Shown in pieces: positions 474 through 59,734 of a DNA stretch of 64,000 bases (positions within the stretch are counted from its first letter, which is position 1; every line of letters begins with the position of its first letter). The stretch lies in the sequence record ON190024.1, one strand, 5' to 3'. Made by a program: the position numbers and the translations under genes. The notes under the pieces were generated by a model that saw only the letters and a list, made by a program, of their open reading frames with translations, was not told the DNA's origin and searched no databases.

Positions 474-1571
474 TTATAGACTATGCAAATAATTGTAGGC
501 GATACTGACTCGCTTATCTTCTAGAGCTTCGCCGTATGCAGGTCCCGGCTCAACGTCAACTTTGACATTTCGGGTTAGTTCAATTAACTCAATAAGCATT
601 TTACGCTTCACTTCATCTTTTACTTGCGATAATGCAACTTCGAACGGTAGACCTTCTTTGTATGCACCTAGCTTACGTAAAACAATGACAATCGTTTCAT
701 CAAATGCATTAGCAACGTTTAGACTCATCAAGATCTCAGATGCTTTATCAAATTGCTTAGTCGCACCGAATTTTCGAGTGTAACGATTACGATGGTCGAA
801 TGATGCCCATTTAGCAATTAGCTGCACGTCTTCACACTTGAAAGGCATACGATTGTAGAACTTCAATTCAAGCAATTCGCGTGCGCTAGGTACTGCACAG
901 AACCCAATTTGACCTAAAAATGCGAAGTACATGTGCGCGTCTTTCTCAGACAGTGCTTTTTGAGTCTCTAGCCACACACGTTCTTTAGGTAGATTCTCAA
1001 GCATGCCGTCATTGATCATTTTCTTGCATAGCTCAATCGTTTCTTCTGCGACTGTAAATCCCATGCTGTAGTAACGAGCATAGAAACGAGCAACACGCAG
1101 AACACGCAATGGATCTTCAGCAAATGCTTCAGTCGTGTGACGAAGAATCTTGTTTTTTAAGTCATCTAGACCCCCGTACGGGTCGATGACATCATCAGTC
1201 GAGCCCCACATAAACAGACTATTTGGTGTCATGTCTGGTATAGCCATTGAGTTGATAGTCAAATCTCGACGAGATAAGTCGTCTTCTAACGTAACACCGT
1301 CAGTCGTGAAAGTGAAGTCAGTAGTTTTGCCGCCAGTACTGCGTTCAACACGCGCAAGCGCGACTTCATTGCCGTCTTTATCGAGCCAAACAGGGAAATC
1401 AGCGCCGATTGGTTCACCGTACATAGTCATCATTTGCTCATGCGTACAACCGGTTACGACGTAATCAATGTCTTTCGGGAATCTAGACCAACCCTCGACG
1501 TGTTTCAGAATAGAGTCGCGTACTGCGCCACCGACAATGTATTTTTTCATCAAGTTAAGATTCGCTTTCAT
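474..1571 (-). CDS. cca: tRNA nucleotidyltransferase (CCA-adding enzyme)
   Basis: VGGAVRD, DIDYVV, DLSRRDLTINSMA, EDPLRVLRVARF motifs; AGGAG SD. Confidence 0.92.
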   Translation of the reverse strand: MKANLNLMKKYIVGGAVRDSILKHVEGWSRFPKDIDYVVTGCTHEQMMTMYGEPIGADFPVWLDKDGNEVALARVERSTGGKTTDFTFTTDGVTLEDDLSRRDLTINSMAIPDMTPNSLFMWGSTDDVIDPYGGLDDLKNKILRHTTEAFAEDPLRVLRVARFYARYYSMGFTVAEETIELCKKMINDGMLENLPKERVWLETQKALSEKDAHMYFAFLGQIGFCAVPSARELLELKFYNRMPFKCEDVQLIAKWASFDHRNRYTRKFGATKQFDKASEILMSLNVANAFDETIVIVLRKLGAYKEGLPFEVALSQVKDEVKRKMLIELIELTRNVKVDVEPGPAYGEALEDKRVSIAYNYLHSL

Positions 1572-3484: not shown

Positions 3485-3976
3485 ATGAGTCAATTGAAAA
3501 CACACGCAGATTCACTAACTAAAGCCGAACTAGATGAGTTTGCACAAGAATATTACGGCATCGAGCTTGATCGTCGTAAATCAAAAGGCGCTATGACTAA
3601 AGCTCTTCTTGAAGGCGCTGAAGGTAAAACTCCACTGAAGCAACTTCCATGGGAAGAGCTTCTTCTTGAAGAAACACCTGATCCAGTCGTAGAGACGAAA
3701 GTCAAAGAAGAATCCGAAGCTGTTAAAGTTGAGCTTCCGAAAGATGATTCTTTCGAGCCTCTACCACTACCTTTCAAGCGTGGTCATGAACGTTTCATGA
3801 TTGCGTCTGATTCTGCCGTTGAATCGGCAAAGGGAATTGTTGCAGGTAAAGCCTCGCTTGACGATGTGCTTGCATCAGATCTTCGCGTAGTTAAATCAAT
3901 CTTGCATTATGTCGAGCAAGACGGCAAGGTGCTAGTGCGTGAAACTCGCAATAGTCAATTCATCACAATTAAATAG
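3485..3976 (+). CDS. inh: Inh, inhibitor of prohead protease / minor capsid protein
   Basis: N-terminal AELDEFAQEYYGIELDRRKS; C-terminal ILHYVEQDGKVLVRETRNSQF like T4 Inh. Confidence 0.8.
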   Translation: MSQLKTHADSLTKAELDEFAQEYYGIELDRRKSKGAMTKALLEGAEGKTPLKQLPWEELLLEETPDPVVETKVKEESEAVKVELPKDDSFEPLPLPFKRGHERFMIASDSAVESAKGIVAGKASLDDVLASDLRVVKSILHYVEQDGKVLVRETRNSQFITIK

Positions 3977-5775: not shown

Positions 5776-6738
5776 CTATTTGTCTAAGTTAAAAATTGTA
5801 ACATCATCATGAGTCACAAACGATGGTTTGTAACCGTATTGCGGACCAAGGCGATTGAATAACCGCTTGTACAGACTGATTCGTTTCTCGTTCCCATCTT
5901 TGATTGATGTTGCAATTGTCTCACAGTTGTATTTCTTAGCAAAGTTCACTGTTTCATTGACTACCGTTGCAAATACTTTCATTGGGTTTTCAGAAGCAGT
6001 CAGATCATTAGTCCAGCCACTCTCACCGCGAACTTGAAAATGCACCTCAACAGCTTGTACAAACTCAGGCGGATTGAAATTGAAAATCTCATCATTACCA
6101 CCCCAATCAATGCCTCGCGGTATTAGAATGACGCGATAAACTTGTTTACCTATCTGAAATAGACCCTCGATTGGTTTCTTGTCACCCACGGGAACGTCGC
6201 CTTTCGGGTACATGACTTTCGCGGGCTTGTCAAGTGATTCCGTCAAATTAACCGAAGACAGCCACTCGCGCCATGTCTTTTTATTTCCGATTTTCGCAAA
6301 CGGAATATCGTCATGGTCTAGCCACTGTGCCGAGCGGTCATACGACTGAGAAGTATCAAATCCGCGGTAATCATCGCCAACCCATAGCCATTTATGATGC
6401 CAGATTTGATTGACTTGACGTGGCTTAGAAACAGCACCGTCTTTGTAAGTGATCATCATACCCGCGCCTGGTTCCTGTACAGTGTCAAATTCAACTGAGT
6501 CATAGAACGCAACGCCACCTTTTTTATAGTCAATTCGGACAATGTTCGGTGTGAATTGCGGATTTGCTATTGATACTTGAGTACGAGCATCAGCAACCAT
6601 TTGCTTGAACTCGTCAGGAACATAGTCAACGTGAACATATAATGAACCGCCAATGTCTTTACCAACGCCCCATTTGCTGCGTTTTACTGCACTACCTTTT
6701 CGGGTTTTTAATGTAGCGCGTTCAAAAAATATGCTCAT
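5776..6738 (-). CDS. Two-domain late protein: N-terminal domain like the non-catalytic domain of dnd-associated methyltransferases, C-terminal internal-head-protein-like domain
   Basis: VGKDIGGSLYVH, EFDTVQEP, IWHHKWLWVGDDY, IGNKKTWREWL; second half resembles 51582..52463. Confidence 0.55.
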   Translation of the reverse strand: MSIFFERATLKTRKGSAVKRSKWGVGKDIGGSLYVHVDYVPDEFKQMVADARTQVSIANPQFTPNIVRIDYKKGGVAFYDSVEFDTVQEPGAGMMITYKDGAVSKPRQVNQIWHHKWLWVGDDYRGFDTSQSYDRSAQWLDHDDIPFAKIGNKKTWREWLSSVNLTESLDKPAKVMYPKGDVPVGDKKPIEGLFQIGKQVYRVILIPRGIDWGGNDEIFNFNPPEFVQAVEVHFQVRGESGWTNDLTASENPMKVFATVVNETVNFAKKYNCETIATSIKDGNEKRISLYKRLFNRLGPQYGYKPSFVTHDDVTIFNLDK

Positions 6739-6740
6739 TA

Positions 6741-7334
6741 TTACCTCGTTGCTGCGTTTGTGATATTTCTGATCATACGCACTGCGAATTGAGTGTCGCC
6801 TGTCATGGCTGCTGACGCCGCCTTATCGACGTAAAACGTGCTATCTTCGATCATGTTCAAGTGATGGTAGATTTCACGAAAATCATGGCGGTCGAACTCT
6901 TTAGTGGTGAAACGAAGCGCGCCTGCTTTCTTGTCATCGTCGTGAACACGTTTGTATTCATCAATGACTCGAATCATTTCACTAGCGTATTTCTTCATTT
7001 TCATGTTATCGAGCTTCAAACGTTTTGCTGCTTGAATTACCTCGTCACGAGGACGCTCAAGTTCAATCGCATCTTTAAGAATGTTCAGGCTGTGAATGGT
7101 ATTCACTGCTGCCTTTTCCATTTGTAATTTGTGATCTTCAAGCGTTCGATTATGCTTTCTCAACTCACCAGTTGCGGTAGCACTTGCAATCAAGCCAGCA
7201 AAAACTCCCCAGAACCCGCCTTTACGCTGCAAGCGTTTCTTAACTTCGCCTTTCGAACCTGCTGTAATTGCTTGAAATTGAGCCCATTTGCCGCTTTTTC
7301 TTGCTTTATCCATTTCTGTTAAAAATTCAATCAT
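6741..7334 (-). CDS. Late hypothetical helical protein, candidate internal head protein
   Basis: Starts MIEFLTE; preceded by late promoter. Confidence 0.7.
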   Translation of the reverse strand: MIEFLTEMDKARKSGKWAQFQAITAGSKGEVKKRLQRKGGFWGVFAGLIASATATGELRKHNRTLEDHKLQMEKAAVNTIHSLNILKDAIELERPRDEVIQAAKRLKLDNMKMKKYASEMIRVIDEYKRVHDDDKKAGALRFTTKEFDRHDFREIYHHLNMIEDSTFYVDKAASAAMTGDTQFAVRMIRNITNAATR

Positions 7335-8889: not shown

Positions 8890-9408
8890 TTACCTCAGAT
8901 AAGTGAAGCTATTTGAATTGCGTTCATGAACTAACAATTCACCGCGAAGCTTAACCCAATGTTCAATTGTCTTTAGATCGTGCGAGTCTCGACGACCGAT
9001 GTGCCAATCATGAATGATTTCAGCCGATAACGGTTGATATAATTCATCACCGCGACGATATGTAGGCATCCATTTAGGCTTGAATTCATCTTCAATATCA
9101 ATTTCGACCTTAATCGCATCAACTGGATCGACTAGAACTACGTCAACACGTTCTAAATGCTCGTGAGAATCAACGTCAACGCATTCAGCGTCTTTAGCAT
9201 CTGATTCATCGACTAAATCACAACGAGTCTCAGAATCAATTACAGCGCATTCTAGCGGTACTTCGGTTTGAGCTACGATTTCATGAGCGATAAGCTCTTC
9301 GATCATTTTGCTCTTTGTAAGGGATTTGTCAAGCTCGATGTCATAATGTTTCAACGCGAATTCAGCGACCCCTCTCTTAGTCTGTTTCTTTAGATATTCA
9401 GTAATCAT
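8890..9408 (-). CDS. Second Inh-like protein
   Basis: VAEFALKHYDIELDKSLTK and IEHWVKLRGELLVHERNSNSF parallel the Inh motifs; AAGGA SD at the reassigned start. Confidence 0.6.
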   Translation of the reverse strand: MITEYLKKQTKRGVAEFALKHYDIELDKSLTKSKMIEELIAHEIVAQTEVPLECAVIDSETRCDLVDESDAKDAECVDVDSHEHLERVDVVLVDPVDAIKVEIDIEDEFKPKWMPTYRRGDELYQPLSAEIIHDWHIGRRDSHDLKTIEHWVKLRGELLVHERNSNSFTYLR

Positions 9409-9416
9409 ATTATTCC

Positions 9417-9623
9417 TTAGCACGTAATAGTGACCCATTCGTTTTGGTTCAAATCAAAGAATGTCAGAGTATCGACACAACGTTCATTCTTCCTCATTTC
9501 TTCGCGATTCGTTTCAAGAACAGGCAAATAATGCTTGCACAATGTGCCGTGATATTTGCGCCCGTCGCGTTCTAATTTAAGACATCCTTGTGTCATACAG
9601 GACATCATTTCTTCTCGTGTCAT
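9417..9623 (-). CDS. Small hypothetical protein, DUF2693/SH3-like
   Basis: MTREEM...HGTL...FFDLNQNEW pattern. Confidence 0.55.
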   Translation of the reverse strand: MTREEMMSCMTQGCLKLERDGRKYHGTLCKHYLPVLETNREEMRKNERCVDTLTFFDLNQNEWVTITC

Positions 9624-51552: not shown

Positions 51553-51560
51553 TATAAATA
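51553..51560 (+). promoter_or_regulatory. Late promoter
   Basis: Perfect TATAAATA. Confidence 0.8.
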
Positions 51561-51581: not shown

Positions 51582-52463
51582 ATGATTATATTCGAAGACA
51601 TCAATCCGCTTTGTGAAGCATTTGACCGCCCAGCACCTTATAAATGGGATTCTATGTACAACGAAGCTCGATTTACGGTTGGGAACGTTCAGTATGTCGC
51701 GTTTATCAAAGATAATGACACAGCAAGAGGTTTAAGTCTGTATGTGGCATTCCAGCGTCGTGATAACGCAACTGGTCAATGGACTCACTCACTTGCTAAA
51801 GGCTCGCCGAAAGACGCCATGACGGTATTGAGCACAATACTGGCAGCAACATTTGACAAGGCATCAAAAGTTGAACCGAATGAAATTACATTCAGTGCAT
51901 TTCGTGACGCAGATGACGAAGACGCAAATAAGCGTTTTAGGCTATACAAGCGTATGGCTGAGCGATACGCAAAGCAAATGAATTACACAGTTCATATCAC
52001 TGGTAATAGCTTCACACTAACAAACAACAATCCACCTAAGATCAGACGACTCCACAATGACGGCATTCACAAAGAAGATGGACTTACATACGTAATTTTC
52101 CCTGCTTGTAATGCCTTTACATGGGCGAAGATTTTCTGGCTTGACAATGACGGCGATTACATCAAACTTACATTACCGCACGGTCGTATTCACATTGTGA
52201 AAAAATCAAGTGACGTAATTGAAATCGAAGCAATTACACCGAAAGGTCGTTTTGACAATCTAGATTCAGATGAGATTTGGATGTCGATGTTATCTGATAT
52301 TAAAGTGAAAGCTAGAGGCGGAAGCACATTTACTATATCAGAGAAAGGCGCGATTTTAGATGCGGGTGATATGATTTTGTGCGAGCAAGGTACGTTTTAT
52401 TACCTAAGTTCTGAAGATGATTTCAAAGAAATCTGGGGATATGAAATCGTCTCGATTGAATAA
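51582..52463 (+). CDS. Late protein, candidate internal head protein
   Basis: NPLCEAFDRP; domain shared with the C-terminal half of 5776..6738. Confidence 0.65.
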   Translation: MIIFEDINPLCEAFDRPAPYKWDSMYNEARFTVGNVQYVAFIKDNDTARGLSLYVAFQRRDNATGQWTHSLAKGSPKDAMTVLSTILAATFDKASKVEPNEITFSAFRDADDEDANKRFRLYKRMAERYAKQMNYTVHITGNSFTLTNNNPPKIRRLHNDGIHKEDGLTYVIFPACNAFTWAKIFWLDNDGDYIKLTLPHGRIHIVKKSSDVIEIEAITPKGRFDNLDSDEIWMSMLSDIKVKARGGSTFTISEKGAILDAGDMILCEQGTFYYLSSEDDFKEIWGYEIVSIE

Positions 52464-52494: not shown

Positions 52495-54159
52495 TCATGG
52501 TGTCAGAGGACTACGTTCTTTCACTTTGCGGTCTTCGTCGATTTCAATATCAACAACTCGCATGAAGTTAGCGACTTCGGTTAGCTCATGTAAACGGTCT
52601 TGCTTTTTGTAAGCAGACAGAACACCGATTTTCGCTGAATTGTCTTTGACTTTCAAGCGAATCACAGCATCGAACTCGGACAATTGAACCACGTCGGCTT
52701 CGAACATCGTATTACGGTTGATGATGAAATCACAATCGCCTTTCTTCCCGTATTTGCCTGGTGCTAGAACAGGTAACCCGTCAGACTCAATAACAAACAC
52801 AACGTTCAGTTTTCTGTCAGATTCGAGCATATCACGCATAATTGATTTGCTATTCTTGCTCGTCGCGTTGACGATTGTTTTCGCGCTAGATTCAACAAAG
52901 TCACATGCAACAAATGGATCAGTTGATGATGTGATGAACGCAGTTGAAACGAACGCGCCAGATTCAAGAATCGAGCCGACACGTTTGCTAGACATTTCAC
53001 AACCACGATATAGCGTAACGCCATTCGACACCTTACCAGCTTCATAGAAAGCTCGGTCTAAGCGAGAAATTGCATCCCTAACCTTTTCATCACCAGTTCC
53101 GTGAACTAACTCTTCATTGACCTTCCACGAATAACGAGACGCAGAATAGCGAGAAATTGCAGCTTGAGTAAGAGAAGATAGACCAGCATATGAATCTTCT
53201 TGCATCATTTGCAACGATAATTGGTCATATTGCTTCTCAAACGCACGTGAACGGGCTTTTAACAGTGCGCCGCATACTTCGCTAATCAAGTTAGCTTTAA
53301 CGCCCTCAGAGCGTGCAGCGTCGATATATGGGTTCATTCGTTCTGCTACATCAACAAGGTCGATGTTCATATCAACAATTGCTTGAGCAGCGTTAGCCAA
53401 TTTCGTTAGACCGTCAGTTGCTGCCGCTTCTGTTAATTGCTGCTTGATAGATGCACTGACCCGCGCTTCCATTTGTGGCATTTGTAGAATTTGATTTGGG
53501 ACGCGAACGGCAGGGTTTTCTTCTACCCATTGACCTAGAACATCATCTTCATAATCATCATAGCCAGCATCGGCAGTCACGATGATTGTTTTCTTGCTTG
53601 AAATGTCAGTCTCTTTCGCCATTTTAGCAGCAAGAATATTGATTGTTTCTTCGGTTGCTTCGACGAGTTTATCAGCGTCATAGCCGGGTTTCGTGATCAC
53701 GAAGAAGCTGAAATCTTCAGCCATTTCATTATCACCGACGTTCATGATTTTAGTCGTTTCGCAGCCGTATCGAAGTTTCTTGAACAGCGTTTTAACACGC
53801 ATGTCGAACATTTTACCGCTACCGATCTTTTGAATACGCATAGACACAGCGTTGGCACGTGTTTTCAACATGAAACTTTGGATCAATTTAACCAATGTTT
53901 CTTGAAACTTTTCTTGGTCTCCCATGTCACGGATGGTTAATCCGCCTTTTTTGCCTCGCATTGCTGAGACAGTACAGAACCACGAACGTTTTCCACGATT
54001 TCCGATGTCTGATTTTGTTTTAGTTGTGAACGAAACTACAACGTCACGAGCTTCGCCTTTCATATCGATCACAAAGAATTTGTTTTCTTTGGTCGAGCGA
54101 GCAGGATAGTAGTCGTACGTTGCGCTCATGTTTTCAGTTAATTGTTGAAATCCAATCAT
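52495..54159 (-). CDS. alt: Alt-like ADP-ribosyltransferase-fold protein
   Basis: Next to ligase as in T4; Alt-like N-terminus (NAVSMRIQK), TLYRG, ITSS; DCD in place of ExE. Confidence 0.7.
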   Translation of the reverse strand: MIGFQQLTENMSATYDYYPARSTKENKFFVIDMKGEARDVVVSFTTKTKSDIGNRGKRSWFCTVSAMRGKKGGLTIRDMGDQEKFQETLVKLIQSFMLKTRANAVSMRIQKIGSGKMFDMRVKTLFKKLRYGCETTKIMNVGDNEMAEDFSFFVITKPGYDADKLVEATEETINILAAKMAKETDISSKKTIIVTADAGYDDYEDDVLGQWVEENPAVRVPNQILQMPQMEARVSASIKQQLTEAAATDGLTKLANAAQAIVDMNIDLVDVAERMNPYIDAARSEGVKANLISEVCGALLKARSRAFEKQYDQLSLQMMQEDSYAGLSSLTQAAISRYSASRYSWKVNEELVHGTGDEKVRDAISRLDRAFYEAGKVSNGVTLYRGCEMSSKRVGSILESGAFVSTAFITSSTDPFVACDFVESSAKTIVNATSKNSKSIMRDMLESDRKLNVVFVIESDGLPVLAPGKYGKKGDCDFIINRNTMFEADVVQLSEFDAVIRLKVKDNSAKIGVLSAYKKQDRLHELTEVANFMRVVDIEIDEDRKVKERSPLTP

Positions 54160-55907: not shown

Positions 55908-56147
55908 ATGATAACGATATACACAATTCCTAACTGTGACGGGTGTCGTCACGCTATCGCCCTCTGTAAGTTCAAACACGTTCCGTATACTGTAATCGAG
56001 TTACAGTCGCAGACTGACATCGACCAATTACATCAAAAGCTTGGTGATAATCGCAATATTCGCGTTCCTCTGGCTATGCATGGTGACACATACATCGGTC
56101 ACCTGCCTGAATTGAAGAAATGGGTTGATGAGCAGACGTATAAATAA
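55908..56147 (+). CDS. Glutaredoxin
   Basis: CDGC, RVP, YIG motifs. Confidence 0.85.
   Translation: MITIYTIPNCDGCRHAIALCKFKHVPYTVIELQSQTDIDQLHQKLGDNRNIRVPLAMHGDTYIGHLPELKKWVDEQTYK
56139..56146 (+). promoter_or_regulatory. Late promoter
   Basis: Perfect TATAAATA. Confidence 0.75.
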
Positions 56148-57632: not shown

Positions 57633-59078
57633 ATGTTAGGTAACTTTGACTCATTTCTGAGTGAAAATCGCCGTCAAACTCAGGGTGGAAAAATCTACCC
57701 TAAGTTTGGTCAAGTTATTGTTGAGCTAGGCACTGCATCTACTGAGTTCAGCAAAGGCAAAGGCGTTGAAACAACTATCGGCATGATGGAGAAGGCAAAT
57801 GAGCTTAAATCTATCATGAACACTAAACTGGCTGAAGATAAAAACGTCGATGAGAAACATTTCGACATCAATCTGAGCGAGAACGTAAGCACGGTTAACC
57901 TGCTTATGGAAAACGAATTCTTGGCGCTGCCAGCTCATGAGCTACAGCAAGTCAAATCAATGATCATGTGTACTGAAGCACGTCTTCCTAGCATCGTGAT
58001 TAAAGGCGGTTCATTGGATCAAGTTGTATCTGAAGCAACGAAACTAGGCTACAAGAAAAGTGACATTCACGTTGTTTTCCCGATGCGTGAAATGAAAATC
58101 AATCTTGCTGACTCTGACAAGCTTGTTATTGAATCTCTATCAATTGACGACAATTCAGCGTCTGAGATTCTTTCAATGGCTGAAAACATCGAGCTTGGTG
58201 ACGTTTATGTGACTGTAGAATCGGTTGATTCTAAGGCTGAACTGTCTGAAATCACTGAACTGAAGATTAAATCTGGTAAAAATGCGCTGACACTAGCTGC
58301 ACTTAACCGCAAGATCATGGATCAGTTTATCGTGAAAGAAGCGAAAGAAGTTTCATATGCACGTGAGCGCAAAGAAGACACTGGTCTCCCAATGCTTGAA
58401 GGTTTCAAGGCATACGATCTGAAACAGAACATCACCATGATTGAACATGCTCAGAACGCATTCACAAAAGAGATTACAGTAGCTCCGCTATCTTCGACTG
58501 CGTGGCAAAATCTTGTTGATGTTAAAGAAGCTTACTTCGATAACGGTTGGAAACTGAAGCACAACAATACAAGCATCGTTCTAACAAATGCAGAACACGC
58601 AATGCGTGCTGGTCGTGTTTGTGAAGAATATCGAGTCGAGCTATCTGAAGCAGGTTATCCTCTTCTTGATATGATCGCAATGATGGAAAGCAAAGGCATG
58701 ACTCGCTTTGATTGTAAATCATTTGCTGAATCAATGATGAAATTCGACGGCTGTGTTACGCCAGAGCGCCAGACTGTGACTGCATTTGTTACTGAATCTG
58801 CTAGTAATCGCGTATTTCACCCGAATATTATGTCAAGCCTACGTCCTGTGACCGAAATGGTTGATGATGTTGACGGTCTAATTCGTGCGCTTGCTAATGA
58901 TCAGTTCAGTACGTTCAAAATCGGACAATCATTCTCTGAATCAATGCTTGACCAAGAAACGCTATACTCTATGATGGAAAGCATTGTTTCTGATGGTGTT
59001 GATGTATCAGTGGACGGGACTTTGATTGAATTCAAAGTGAATGCAACCAATTACCTAATCAATATCGACATCAAATAA
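57633..59078 (+). CDS. Candidate internal head protein with degenerate P-loop-kinase-like N-terminus
   Basis: MLGNFDSFLSE; GGKIYPKFGQVIVELGTASTEFSKG. Confidence 0.55.
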   Translation: MLGNFDSFLSENRRQTQGGKIYPKFGQVIVELGTASTEFSKGKGVETTIGMMEKANELKSIMNTKLAEDKNVDEKHFDINLSENVSTVNLLMENEFLALPAHELQQVKSMIMCTEARLPSIVIKGGSLDQVVSEATKLGYKKSDIHVVFPMREMKINLADSDKLVIESLSIDDNSASEILSMAENIELGDVYVTVESVDSKAELSEITELKIKSGKNALTLAALNRKIMDQFIVKEAKEVSYARERKEDTGLPMLEGFKAYDLKQNITMIEHAQNAFTKEITVAPLSSTAWQNLVDVKEAYFDNGWKLKHNNTSIVLTNAEHAMRAGRVCEEYRVELSEAGYPLLDMIAMMESKGMTRFDCKSFAESMMKFDGCVTPERQTVTAFVTESASNRVFHPNIMSSLRPVTEMVDDVDGLIRALANDQFSTFKIGQSFSESMLDQETLYSMMESIVSDGVDVSVDGTLIEFKVNATNYLINIDIK

Positions 59079-59086
59079 GGTGAATC

Positions 59087-59734
59087 ATGAAACAATTTTG
59101 TAATTTTTTAGCTGAAGTTCAGAAATACAGTTCAGCGGCTACGTCGATTCGCGGTAAAGAAGTTGCTGCATTGGTTAAATTGTTCAAGTCAGGCATGTTC
59201 GTGCCTGGCGGAACAGCACTTGACTACGGCGCGGGCAAATACGCTCGTAATGCTGAATTTCTTCGCAGTGAAGGCATTCGCACTTACGCATACGACAAAT
59301 TCAATGGGACATCGGCTGATGGTTGGAACGCAGTTAGCTTAACTATCCCAAATGGTGAGACATTCGATACCGGCTTCACGTCATACGTATTGAACGTTGT
59401 TCCTGAAGAAATCGAAGCAGAAATCATCCGTGATGTTGAGTCTCGTACACGCGGTAAAGTGTTCCATATTACACGCGGTACTGACATCACTCAGACTGTA
59501 TTCAACGTAATCAGCGGTAAGAGCAAGAATGACGTAATGATGCAATTCATTGCTCAAGAATATCCAGAGATTTACGGTCAGATTGTCGCGAACGGTGGGA
59601 CGAAAGAATTGGCTAAAGAGATTGCAACCCGTGGAGTTGTAACAGCTAAAGACAGTTTCCAACGTATTCCAGACCTATCGAAATACGGTTACAAGAAATC
59701 TGGTTCAGGTGCTTCGGTAGTGTGGACAAAATAA
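59087..59734 (+). CDS. SAM-dependent methyltransferase, dnd-associated family-like
   Basis: LDYGAGK motif I, YAYDKF, SYVLNVV; N-terminus MKQFCNFLAE. Confidence 0.8.
   Translation: MKQFCNFLAEVQKYSSAATSIRGKEVAALVKLFKSGMFVPGGTALDYGAGKYARNAEFLRSEGIRTYAYDKFNGTSADGWNAVSLTIPNGETFDTGFTSYVLNVVPEEIEAEIIRDVESRTRGKVFHITRGTDITQTVFNVISGKSKNDVMMQFIAQEYPEIYGQIVANGGTKELAKEIATRGVVTAKDSFQRIPDLSKYGYKKSGSGASVVWTK

What the first reader, a model, noticed from the sequence alone, without database searches (positions are those of the whole stretch)
5776..6738. The other domain of the dnd-associated methyltransferase, split off 52 kb away and fused to an internal-protein domain
Seen: residues ~23-160 carry GKDIGGSLYVH...NIVRI...FDT..EP...IWHHKWLWV.DDY...IG...W..WL. 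An internal VN-LTE-SLDKP then precedes a second domain that aligns by eye with 51582..52463 (LCE-AFDRP...VLSTI...KRFRLYKRM versus VFATV...KRISLYKRL). From memory, the first pattern matches the accessory domain fused to bacterial dnd-associated methyltransferases (GK..G.LYVH, PDFDT..HP, ILHRK..FV). Inference: the phage encodes both halves of this bacterial module as separate packaged proteins, and gp21 may release this domain at the internal LTE. This could be a two-part anti-phosphorothioation system.
Basis: partly seen in the sequence, partly recalled or inferred. Interest (0 to 1): 0.78.

Follow-up and report, generated by a model that had tools for sequence, protein, structure and literature searches.

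The report
Phage-packaged split methyltransferase partner domain
A KVP40-type Vibrio phage carries, as two genes 52 kb apart, the two halves of a bacterial methyltransferase module found beside DNA-phosphorothioation defence genes, and both halves look built for capsid packaging and injection, which suggests an untested counter-defence device.

Summary
The window is Vibrio phage PVA8/KVP40, and ORF 5776..6738 (-) is KVP40.0371 (320 aa).

- **N-terminal domain ("X", residues 7-163).** It belongs to a large, unnamed family: 731 clusters at 50% identity. The predicted fold is confident (pLDDT 95.6) and has no relative in the PDB. It is homologous to the C-terminal domain of TIGR04096 "dnd-associated methyltransferase" (hhalign 92.7%, E 4e-7).
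- **The other half.** The 215-aa protein at 59087..59734 is homologous to the methyltransferase half of TIGR04096 (95.3%, E 2e-8).
- **Linkage elsewhere.** The two halves are fused or adjacent in 24 of 80 viral loci. In 43 of 67 cellular loci, X is fused to or beside such a methyltransferase, and many of those loci also carry Dnd/Ssp/DptF genes.
- **C-terminal domain.** It is a GNAT-like fold shared with the 293-aa protein at 51582..52463. The alignment begins exactly at NLTE|S versus PLCE|A.

Packaging, cleavage by the prohead protease and an anti-phosphorothioation role are inferred, not shown. Frequent fusions of X to CCA-adding enzymes keep an RNA target open. This is a new variant of known kinds and a good experimental lead.

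The parts
5776..6738 (-). Whole gene (KVP40.0371 orthologue), 320 aa: leader, X domain, processing-type site, GNAT-like domain
6721..6738 (-). N-terminal leader MSIFFE (M.IIFE in relatives). It aligns with the MIIFE start of the 293-aa paralogue and is a candidate capsid-targeting/propeptide segment ending in Glu
   Evidence: function inferred
6250..6720 (-). X domain (res 7-163), HHKW type. It is homologous to the C-terminal domain of TIGR04096, with a confident predicted fold that has no PDB relative
6238..6249 (-). Junction N-L-T-E: conserved VNL(T/S)E|(S/A)(L/F)D(K/R)P, a candidate prohead-protease (L/I-x-E) site. It is the low-confidence N-terminal stretch of the C-domain model
   Evidence: cleavage inferred
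5779..6237 (-). C-terminal domain (res 168-320), GNAT-like fold, paralogous to the N-half of the 293-aa protein
59087..59734 (+). 215-aa class I SAM methyltransferase-like protein (KVP40.0066 orthologue), the methyltransferase half. Leader MKQFCNFLAE
51582..52463 (+). 293-aa paralogue. Leader MIIFEDINPLCE, then the shared GNAT-like domain (res 13-139), then an acidic C-half
51553..51560 (+). Exact T4-type late-promoter box TATAAATA, 22 nt before the 293-aa gene
   Evidence: function inferred
56139..56146 (+). TATAAATA before gp24. gp24, gp55, the 481-aa gene and the methyltransferase gene follow with 8-9 nt gaps
   Evidence: co-transcription inferred
6741..7334 (-). 197-aa gene (leader MIEFLTE) immediately upstream. 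Together with the target gene it forms a cassette between two terminator-like hairpins, with TCTAAATA at 7367-7360

Best explanation
KVP40.0371 is a small 'polyprotein' of the T4 internal-protein type. It starts with a short leader (M.IIFE), followed by the X domain, then a conserved Leu-x-Glu site (NLTE|S), then a GNAT-like domain that it shares with a second leader-bearing protein.

Most likely course of events:
- The gene is made late and carried into the prohead.
- It is cut after Glu6 and Glu167 by the gp21-type prohead protease, so an 18-kDa X domain and a 17-kDa GNAT-like domain lie free in the head.
- These are injected with the DNA, together with the separately encoded, leader-bearing 215-aa methyltransferase.
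- In the cell, X pairs with that methyltransferase and rebuilds the two-domain enzyme that bacteria and other phages encode as one chain (TIGR04096 type). X serves as the substrate-recognising or regulatory partner.
- The pair methylates a nucleic-acid target as an immediate-early counter-defence, most plausibly against restriction linked to DNA phosphorothioation.

Shown here: the domain homologies, the fusion/adjacency/co-occurrence of the two halves, the phosphorothioation context of the cellular relatives, and the conservation and alignment of the leader and junction.

Inferred: packaging, cleavage, physical pairing, the substrate and the biological role.
For: Homology of both halves to TIGR04096:
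- hhalign gives 92.7%, E 4e-7 for X and 95.3%, E 2e-8 for the methyltransferase.
- Intermediate homologues hit TIGR04096 positions about 285-462 at E down to 6e-13.
- BLASTP of the 215-aa protein to natural methyltransferase+X fusions gives E 5e-8 and 6e-4.

Linkage of the two halves:
- An adjacent gene pair in L003, E 1e-15.
- 15 fused and 9 adjacent among 80 IMG/VR loci, in both domain orders and inside giant polyvalent proteins.
- 37 of 67 cellular loci have a bona fide TIGR04096 protein (564-612 bits) fused, adjacent or nearby. Six more have a methyltransferase of the 215-aa type.
- Both genes are in all complete KVP40-group genomes (51 versus 49 records; the 2 exceptions are partial genomes).
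- A second, independent 317-kb phage contig has them about 47 kb apart.

Phosphorothioation context: SspC, SspD, DndD/PbeC, DndF/DptF, a DndA-like protein and an HNH protein resembling PT-DNA-binding endonucleases.

Leaders and site:
- The junction is invariant in 8 cluster representatives.
- It aligns column for column with the PLCE|A site of the paralogue.
- Two paralogue members read MIIFE|AF directly, as if X were inserted between two sites.
- 77 of 118 relatives of the methyltransferase carry [LI]xE with the Glu at residue 5-12, against 2-13 of 118 at control offsets.
- Standalone X genes in other phages carry leaders such as MKFLRYLTE|A directly before the domain.
- The junction residues have pLDDT below 50.
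- Late-promoter boxes lie upstream.

Background: T4 internal proteins are diverse anti-restriction proteins that share only a capsid-targeting sequence (PMC3012670). Injected methylases are a known evasion route (PMC10853773).
Against: - No virion proteome exists for this phage group in the papers checked, so packaging and cleavage are unproven.
- In this window the first site reads FFE, not the I-x-E seen in relatives.
- A loose L/I-x-E motif near the N-terminus occurs in 13 of 77 window ORFs, so the motif alone is weak.
- The methyltransferase is of the Methyltransf_23 type, and no amino-methyltransferase (D/N/S)PP(Y/F/W) motif is apparent by eye. It has no significant PDB relative.
- X is also recurrently fused to CCA-adding enzymes, NFACT-R, Tpt1/KptA-like, NTP_transf_2 and ParB_N domains. 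That points as much to RNA or nucleic-acid ends as to phosphorothioated DNA.
- PADLOC has no model for either half.
- Co-occurrence inside the KVP40 clade is not phylogenetically independent.
Confidence: 0.5

Rival explanations
1. The module works on RNA, not DNA. X binds tRNA or RNA 3' ends, and the methyltransferase marks them, in the way Hen1 2'-O-methylates repaired RNA. This would protect or restore tRNAs attacked by host anticodon or CCA-directed nucleases early in infection.
For: X is fused to complete CCA-adding enzymes (PolyA_pol head, RNA-binding, HD and tRNA_NucTran2_2 domains) in P0062, L093, L094, L122 and L129. It is fused to NFACT-R RNA-binding domains in P0023 and L080, to a Tpt1/KptA-like domain in P0073 and to NTP_transf_2 in P0032. 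The phage has its own CCA-adding enzyme 4 kb away. The methyltransferase is of the Methyltransf_23 type rather than a DNA methylase type.
Against: The cellular relatives sit in DNA phosphorothioation and restriction islands. X also occurs with ParB_N and next to SNF2 helicases in polyvalent proteins. No RNA-ligase or kinase-phosphatase repair genes were seen beside it.
Confidence: 0.25
2. The protein is an ordinary, uncleaved two-domain cytoplasmic protein. The MIIFE start and the NLTE linker are left over from gene duplication and have nothing to do with the prohead protease or with packaging.
For: There are no proteomic data. L/I-x-E is a low-information motif. The window copy has FFE at the first site. 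No exact TATAAATA lies upstream of this gene, only a one-mismatch variant.
Against: The Glu and the residues around it are invariant across both paralogous families, although the rest is only 23-28% identical (A6 row identities). The alignment of the two families starts exactly at the site. There is strong family-wide enrichment of such leaders on the partner methyltransferase and on standalone X genes of other phages. The Alt-like protein nearby, whose T4 counterpart is packaged, has the same kind of leader.
Confidence: 0.2
3. X acts without the phage methyltransferase, as a decoy. The host-type X is a separate subunit beside TIGR04096 proteins in defence islands, and an injected copy could compete for that partner and disarm the host system.
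For: In 21 cellular loci X is a separate gene beside a complete TIGR04096 protein. That implies a protein-protein partnership which a mimic could poison.
Against: The phage keeps its own methyltransferase half in every complete genome. Many phages fuse the two. The catalytic-looking invariant residues of X are retained. Whether Vibrio hosts carry the module was not examined.
Confidence: 0.1

Closest known systems
TIGR04096 (dnd_rel_methyl), 'DNA phosphorothioation-associated putative methyltransferase'
   Same: The two-domain plan is the same: an N-terminal class I methyltransferase plus a C-terminal accessory domain. Both halves are homologous to the two phage proteins, and the family is genuinely linked to Dnd/Ssp genes.
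   Different: The phage halves are separate genes 52 kb apart. Neither scores against the model. The phage X belongs to the HHKW branch, which in cells is an extra partner beside or fused to full TIGR04096 proteins. The function of TIGR04096 itself is unknown.
T4 internal proteins (IPI-III) and Alt: capsid-targeted, gp21-processed, injected proteins
   Same: Both have short N-terminal leaders ending in L/I-x-E, late-promoter boxes and a T4-type phage with gp21, inh and Alt homologues. T4 internal proteins are diverse anti-restriction proteins that share only the targeting sequence (PMC3012670).
   Different: There is no sequence similarity to the T4 proteins. Here a second, internal site would split one precursor into two cargo domains. 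Packaging has not been demonstrated.
Polyvalent proteins of phages and conjugative elements, and P1 DarB (PMC5512222)
   Same: X and its methyltransferase occur as neighbouring domains inside 2,000-4,900-aa proteins alongside SNF2 helicase, LPD38 and ART-PolyVal domains. The idea of several effectors delivered together at entry is the same.
   Different: KVP40.0371 has only two domains. In the 2017 paper, searches for phosphorothioation, Dnd, CCA-adding, NFACT, tRNA and methyltransferase terms found no description of X. No Pfam family matched the X region in any protein scanned.
GNAT acyltransferase superfamily (for the C-terminal domain)
   Same: The predicted fold matches GNAT structures only. 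All top 50 Foldseek hits are GNATs, with probability up to 1.0.
   Different: TM-scores are low (0.34-0.46). No GNAT family is found by Pfam. No Q/R-x-x-G-x-G/A acetyl-CoA loop is visible by eye in this copy. It may be a non-catalytic or divergent relative.
JSS1_004, a phage kinase that inactivates DndFGH (PMC12345140)
   Same: It is a phage counter-measure against phosphorothioation-based defence that acts early.
   Different: The protein is unrelated and the chemistry is different (protein phosphorylation). It is expressed after entry, not packaged.

Membership tests
TIGR04096 (dnd_rel_methyl) | Whole-protein score at or above the curated cut-off of 150 bits | tested here: not met
   No hit at E<=1 for the 320-aa or the 215-aa protein. 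True members in cellular loci score 564-612 bits.
TIGR04096 (dnd_rel_methyl) | C-terminal accessory domain homologous to the X domain | tested here: met
   hhalign 92.7%, E 4e-7, res 21-164 versus about 333-489. Homologues hit model positions about 285-462 at E 4e-5 to 6e-13.
TIGR04096 (dnd_rel_methyl) | N-terminal methyltransferase domain homologous to the 215-aa protein | tested here: met
   hhalign 95.3%, E 2e-8, including the D-Y-G-x-G and V-[IL]-N-V motifs.
TIGR04096 (dnd_rel_methyl) | Genomic association with DNA phosphorothioation genes | tested here: met
   This holds for the cellular relatives, which have SspC/SspD, DndD/PbeC, DndF/DptF and DndA-like neighbours. The phage has no such genes nearby.
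T4-type internal (capsid-targeted) proteins | N-terminal targeting leader of about 5-12 residues ending in L/I-x-E | tested here: inconclusive
   The window copy reads MSIFFE and relatives read M.IIFE. The partner methyltransferase reads MKQFCNFLAE, with 65% of its family alike. The motif is short.
T4-type internal (capsid-targeted) proteins | Presence in the virion and cleavage by the prohead protease | not testable with these tools
   No proteome was found in the papers read. Only conservation of the sites is available.
T4-type internal (capsid-targeted) proteins | Late transcription | tested here: inconclusive
   Exact TATAAATA lies before the 293-aa gene and before the gp24-to-methyltransferase block. 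Only TCTAAATA lies before the cassette holding this gene.
Polyvalent proteins | Two or more unrelated effector domains in one chain of a phage or conjugative element | tested here: met
   X plus a GNAT-like domain in this protein. X also lies inside proteins with LPD38, SNF2 and ART-PolyVal domains.
GNAT superfamily (C-terminal domain) | GNAT fold | tested here: met
   Model pLDDT 86.8. Foldseek hits are all GNATs, E about 1e-3, TM 0.34-0.46. The resemblance is modest.
GNAT superfamily (C-terminal domain) | Acetyl-CoA pyrophosphate-binding loop and a match to a GNAT sequence family | tested here: not met
   Pfam gives only a weak DUF6934 hit (E 0.013). No Q/R-x-x-G-x-G/A is seen by eye before the first long helix.
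Class I SAM methyltransferases (215-aa protein) | Motif I (D/E-x-G-x-G) and a match to a methyltransferase family | tested here: met
   LDYGAGKY is present. Many homologues at about 40-45% identity carry PF13489. The window protein itself does not reach Pfam thresholds.

The most novel reading that the evidence does not exclude
X is a previously unrecognised nucleic-acid recognition module with a new fold. It reads a chemical feature shared by its contexts, either a phosphorothioate or thiolated nucleotide or a nucleic-acid terminus, and aims different transferases at it (methyl, nucleotidyl, ADP-ribosyl). In KVP40-type phages it is freed from a capsid polyprotein and injected with its methyltransferase. 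There it would mask or mimic the host's phosphorothioation-linked self mark, which would make it the first packaged anti-Dnd/Ssp enzyme pair.
Probability: 0.15. Interest if true: 0.9.

Novelty: new variant of a known kind. Interest (0 to 1): 0.66.

Why it matters
TIGR04096 has been a context-named "putative methyltransferase" with no known role. Its accessory domain matched no Pfam family of its own in any protein scanned here, and its predicted fold has no solved relative.

This work links that domain to three settings:
- phosphorothioation and restriction islands in cells;
- giant polyvalent proteins of phages;
- leader-bearing, probably capsid-packaged proteins of T4-like phages.

That gives a concrete, testable candidate for a counter-defence enzyme pair delivered with the phage DNA. 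It also offers a natural example of an internal protein that would carry two cargo domains separated by a protease site. Last, it provides a genetic handle on what the bacterial module does, through a two-gene split in a cultivable phage group that includes phage nt-1 on Vibrio natriegens.

Tried and rejected
- Direct HMM scans of the window proteins against NCBIfam, Pfam and PADLOC gave nothing useful. The link to TIGR04096 appeared only through intermediates and profile-profile comparison.
- Pairwise BLASTP of the two paralogues found nothing.
- Sequence searches against PDB chains found no relative of X or of the methyltransferase.
- Foldseek of the X model against the PDB gave no match at E<=1e-3. 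Against BFVD it returned only one homologous piece of a 1,232-aa viral protein.
- A PLD-type HxK(x)4D reading of the HHKW motif was considered by eye and dropped. The spacing is off by one and no fold match supports it.
- A mixed MAFFT alignment (A5) misplaced the 293-aa family on the X domain and was discarded.
- The two 228-aa genes upstream of X in L002 are not methyltransferase relatives.
- A literature search on the TIGR04096 name was uninformative.
- In the polyvalent-protein paper, term searches found no description of X. In the Dnd reappraisal paper, the passages returned described only an MTaX1 domain, and no MTaX1 family appeared in any of the Pfam scans. The RNA-repair survey by the same group is not held.
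- The loose leader motif across all window ORFs is not specific (19 of 77).

Full report
**What is there.** The window is 100% identical to Vibrio phage PVA8 and 98.5-99.7% identical to KVP40, a T4-like Schizotequatrovirus. The finding's coordinates are one ORF on the minus strand, 5776..6738, 320 aa, orthologous to KVP40.0371 and annotated as hypothetical.

**The N-terminal domain ("X", residues about 7-163).**
- A word-indexed search found full-length relatives only in KVP40-group phages. It also found the first half alone as 176-180-aa proteins, and joined to other C-termini.
- An exhaustive phmmer search of 1.84 billion cluster representatives gave 731 proteins at E<=1e-3 and 407 at E<=1e-10. 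These are standalone proteins of about 160 aa, mid-sized fusions, and copies inside proteins of 2,000-4,900 aa.
- In 58 standalone members, P90, H114, H115, K116, W117, V120, Y124 and F127 are invariant. G26, K27, Y34, H36, Y39, F84 and E89 are nearly so.
- AlphaFold2 on that alignment gives pLDDT 95.6 and pTM 0.89.
- Foldseek finds no PDB structure at E<=1e-3 (best 0.94). In BFVD it finds only one homologous fragment. The domain is therefore real, widespread, probably enzymatic or ligand-binding, and without a solved relative.

**Is X the accessory domain of the dnd-associated methyltransferase?**
- The window protein does not hit TIGR04096, even at E<=1.
- Six of ten mid-sized homologues do, over model positions about 285-462 of 478, with E from 4e-5 to 6e-13. 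A seventh hits through its methyltransferase half. Several have an N-terminal Methyltransf_23 domain.
- A profile of X against a profile of twelve bona fide TIGR04096 proteins gives 92.7% probability and E 4e-7 over 148 columns. VGKDIGGSLYVH lies over VGKLVDNALIVH, EFDTVQEP over PEFDEKPHP, and IWHHKWLWV over PLLFRKEQFL.

**Is 59087..59734 the other half?** Yes.
- The 215-aa protein aligns by plain BLASTP to the N-terminal methyltransferase part of natural methyltransferase+X fusions: P0064 at E 5e-8 and P0153 at E 6e-4.
- It aligns to a 402-aa methyltransferase encoded immediately upstream of a standalone X gene in contig L003 (41% identity, E 1e-15).
- Its family profile matches the methyltransferase half of TIGR04096 at 95.3%, E 2e-8.
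- No PDB methyltransferase matches better than E 0.39.

**Distribution of the two halves.**
- Among 50,697 phage records, X is in 51 and the methyltransferase in 49, all Vibrio schizo-T4 phages. The two records with X alone are partial genomes of 157 and 159 kb. This shows conservation within one clade, not independent association.
- Independent evidence comes from 80 IMG/VR loci with X. The methyltransferase is fused in 15 (both domain orders, including giant proteins), adjacent in 9, and 2 kb away in 1.
- A 317-kb viral contig has them about 47 kb apart, a second split arrangement.
- In 67 cellular loci, mostly Planctomycetota, 37 have a complete TIGR04096 protein fused to X (15), adjacent (21) or nearby (1). 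These proteins score 564-612 bits against the cut-off of 150. Six more loci have a methyltransferase of the 215-aa type, fused or adjacent.
The phage domain belongs to an HHKW branch that, in cells, is an additional partner of full TIGR04096 proteins, which already carry their own divergent copy.

**Is the bacterial module really phosphorothioation-linked?** Conserved neighbours in those loci are:
- SspD (289 bits), SspC (237) and DndD/PbeC (682);
- DndF/DptF (507 bits in PADLOC; 396 bits on TIGR03238, cut-off 50);
- a DndA-like desulfurase and an HNH protein resembling PT-DNA-binding endonucleases;
- helicase-nuclease proteins, BrxL-kinase fusions and UvrD-PD-(D/E)xK proteins.

The name is therefore justified by context, but the function of the module is still unknown.

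**The C-terminal domain and the junction.**
- PHROG profiles cross-match the two window proteins.
- hhalign of the two families gives 97.9%, E 5e-13, and the alignment starts at NLTE|SLDKP versus PLCE|AFDRP.
- A joint alignment shows more. The M.IIFE start of the 0371 family lies over the MIIFE start of the 293-aa family. The Glu before (S/A)(L/F)D(K/R)P is invariant in all 16 sequences. Two members of the 293-aa family read MIIFE|AFSRP with nothing in between.
- The simplest reading is that X sits between two protease-type sites of a duplicated leader-bearing gene.
- The C-domain model (pLDDT 86.8) matches only GNAT acetyltransferases, with modest TM-scores (0.34-0.46). Its first four residues, N-L-T-E, have pLDDT below 50. 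No acetyl-CoA loop is evident, so catalytic activity is doubtful.

**Evidence for packaging (all indirect).**
- T4 internal proteins share only a short N-terminal targeting sequence and are removed from it by gp21 after L/I-x-E. They are diverse anti-restriction proteins (PMC3012670).
- In the methyltransferase family, 77 of 118 members have [LI]-x-E with the Glu at residue 5-12. This compares with 2-13 of 118 at internal control offsets and 13 of 77 window ORFs.
- Standalone X genes in other phage contigs carry leaders such as MKFLRYLTE|A or MITFKRFLVE|T directly before the domain.
- The nearby Alt-like ADP-ribosyltransferase, the 197-aa protein just upstream of this gene and the 481-aa protein upstream of the methyltransferase have the same kind of start.
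- Exact TATAAATA boxes precede the 293-aa gene and the gp24-gp55-481aa-methyltransferase block.
- The 197-aa gene plus this gene form a cassette between two terminator-like hairpins, preceded by TCTAAATA.
- Against this, the window copy reads FFE at the first site where relatives read IFE. The loose motif is common. No virion proteome was found.

**What does it do?** Two contexts pull in different directions.
- DNA defence. The cellular relatives sit in Dnd/Ssp/DptF islands. X occurs beside SNF2 helicases in polyvalent proteins and with ParB_N. Methylases delivered with invading DNA are a known evasion route (PMC10853773).
- RNA. X is fused to complete CCA-adding enzymes in at least five proteins, and to NFACT-R, Tpt1/KptA-like and NTP_transf_2 domains. 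The phage has its own CCA-adding enzyme at 474..1571. The methyltransferase is not of a DNA-methylase type.
- I commit to an injected two-part methyltransferase acting as counter-defence, with X as the targeting partner. I rate the phosphorothioation-linked DNA target only somewhat above the RNA target.
- A known anti-Dnd phage protein, JSS1_004, is an unrelated kinase.

**Verdict.** Packaging and cleavage are plausible but unproven. The anti-phosphorothioation role is a reasonable, untested hypothesis with a serious RNA-directed rival. I file it as a new variant of known kinds (T4 internal proteins, polyvalent proteins, the TIGR04096 module). It rests on a domain family that matched no Pfam family of its own in these scans and has no solved structure.

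Noticed in passing
window 474..1571 (-): Class II tRNA nucleotidyltransferase (CCA/A-adding enzyme; PDB 1vfg at E 1.6e-16), 4 kb from the X gene on the same strand. In other phage contigs X is fused to this kind of enzyme.
   Followed up: partly
window 6741..7334 (-): 197-aa basic protein (pI 9.8) with leader MIEFLTE and a hydrophobic stretch. Its stop is 2 nt from the start of the target gene. The two-gene cassette lies between terminator-like hairpins (7402-7379 and 5667-5645) and has TCTAAATA at 7367-7360.
   Followed up: partly
window 57633..59078 (+): 481-aa acidic protein (pI 4.9) with leader MLGNFDSFLSE, 8 nt upstream of the methyltransferase gene and downstream of gp24 and gp55. It may be another packaged protein. 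No family was assigned.
   Followed up: no
window 52495..54159 (-): Alt-like ADP-ribosyltransferase (phrog_802, E 3e-89) with leader MIGFQQLTE. It is convergent with the 293-aa paralogue.
   Followed up: partly
window 51582..52463 (+), residues 146-293: The C-terminal half of the 293-aa paralogue is acidic (pI 4.95), conserved within the clade, and has no family match.
   Followed up: no
window 3485..3976 (+) and 8890..9438 (-): The KVP40 record names both of these genes, which flank the cassette, as prohead protease inhibitor (inh). The phage may regulate gp21 processing in an elaborate way.
   Followed up: no
L007-L052 (Planctomycetota and other MAG contigs): HHKW-type X genes lie divergently next to, or fused onto, full TIGR04096 proteins. 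These sit in islands with SspC/SspD, DndD/PbeC, DptF, a DndA-like protein, HNH, HIT-helicase-nuclease, BrxL-kinase and UvrD-PD-(D/E)xK genes.
   Followed up: partly
L076 and L163 (IMG/VR contig 3300040801_002079, 317 kb): A distantly related jumbo phage contig has a standalone X gene (leader MKLNE) and a homologue of the methyltransferase about 47 kb apart. This is an independent split arrangement like that of KVP40.
   Followed up: partly
L080-L084, L103, L104, L111, L114, L115: Further recurrent X fusions occur in viral contigs: X plus NFACT-R (574 aa) and X plus ParB_N (about 480 aa).
   Followed up: partly
P0015 and P0013 (metagenomic homologues): Other X fusions to unrelated C-terminal parts also have an L-x-E right after the X domain (NNLNE|K, LPLE|S). 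This hints that a cleavable X cassette is used more widely.
   Followed up: no
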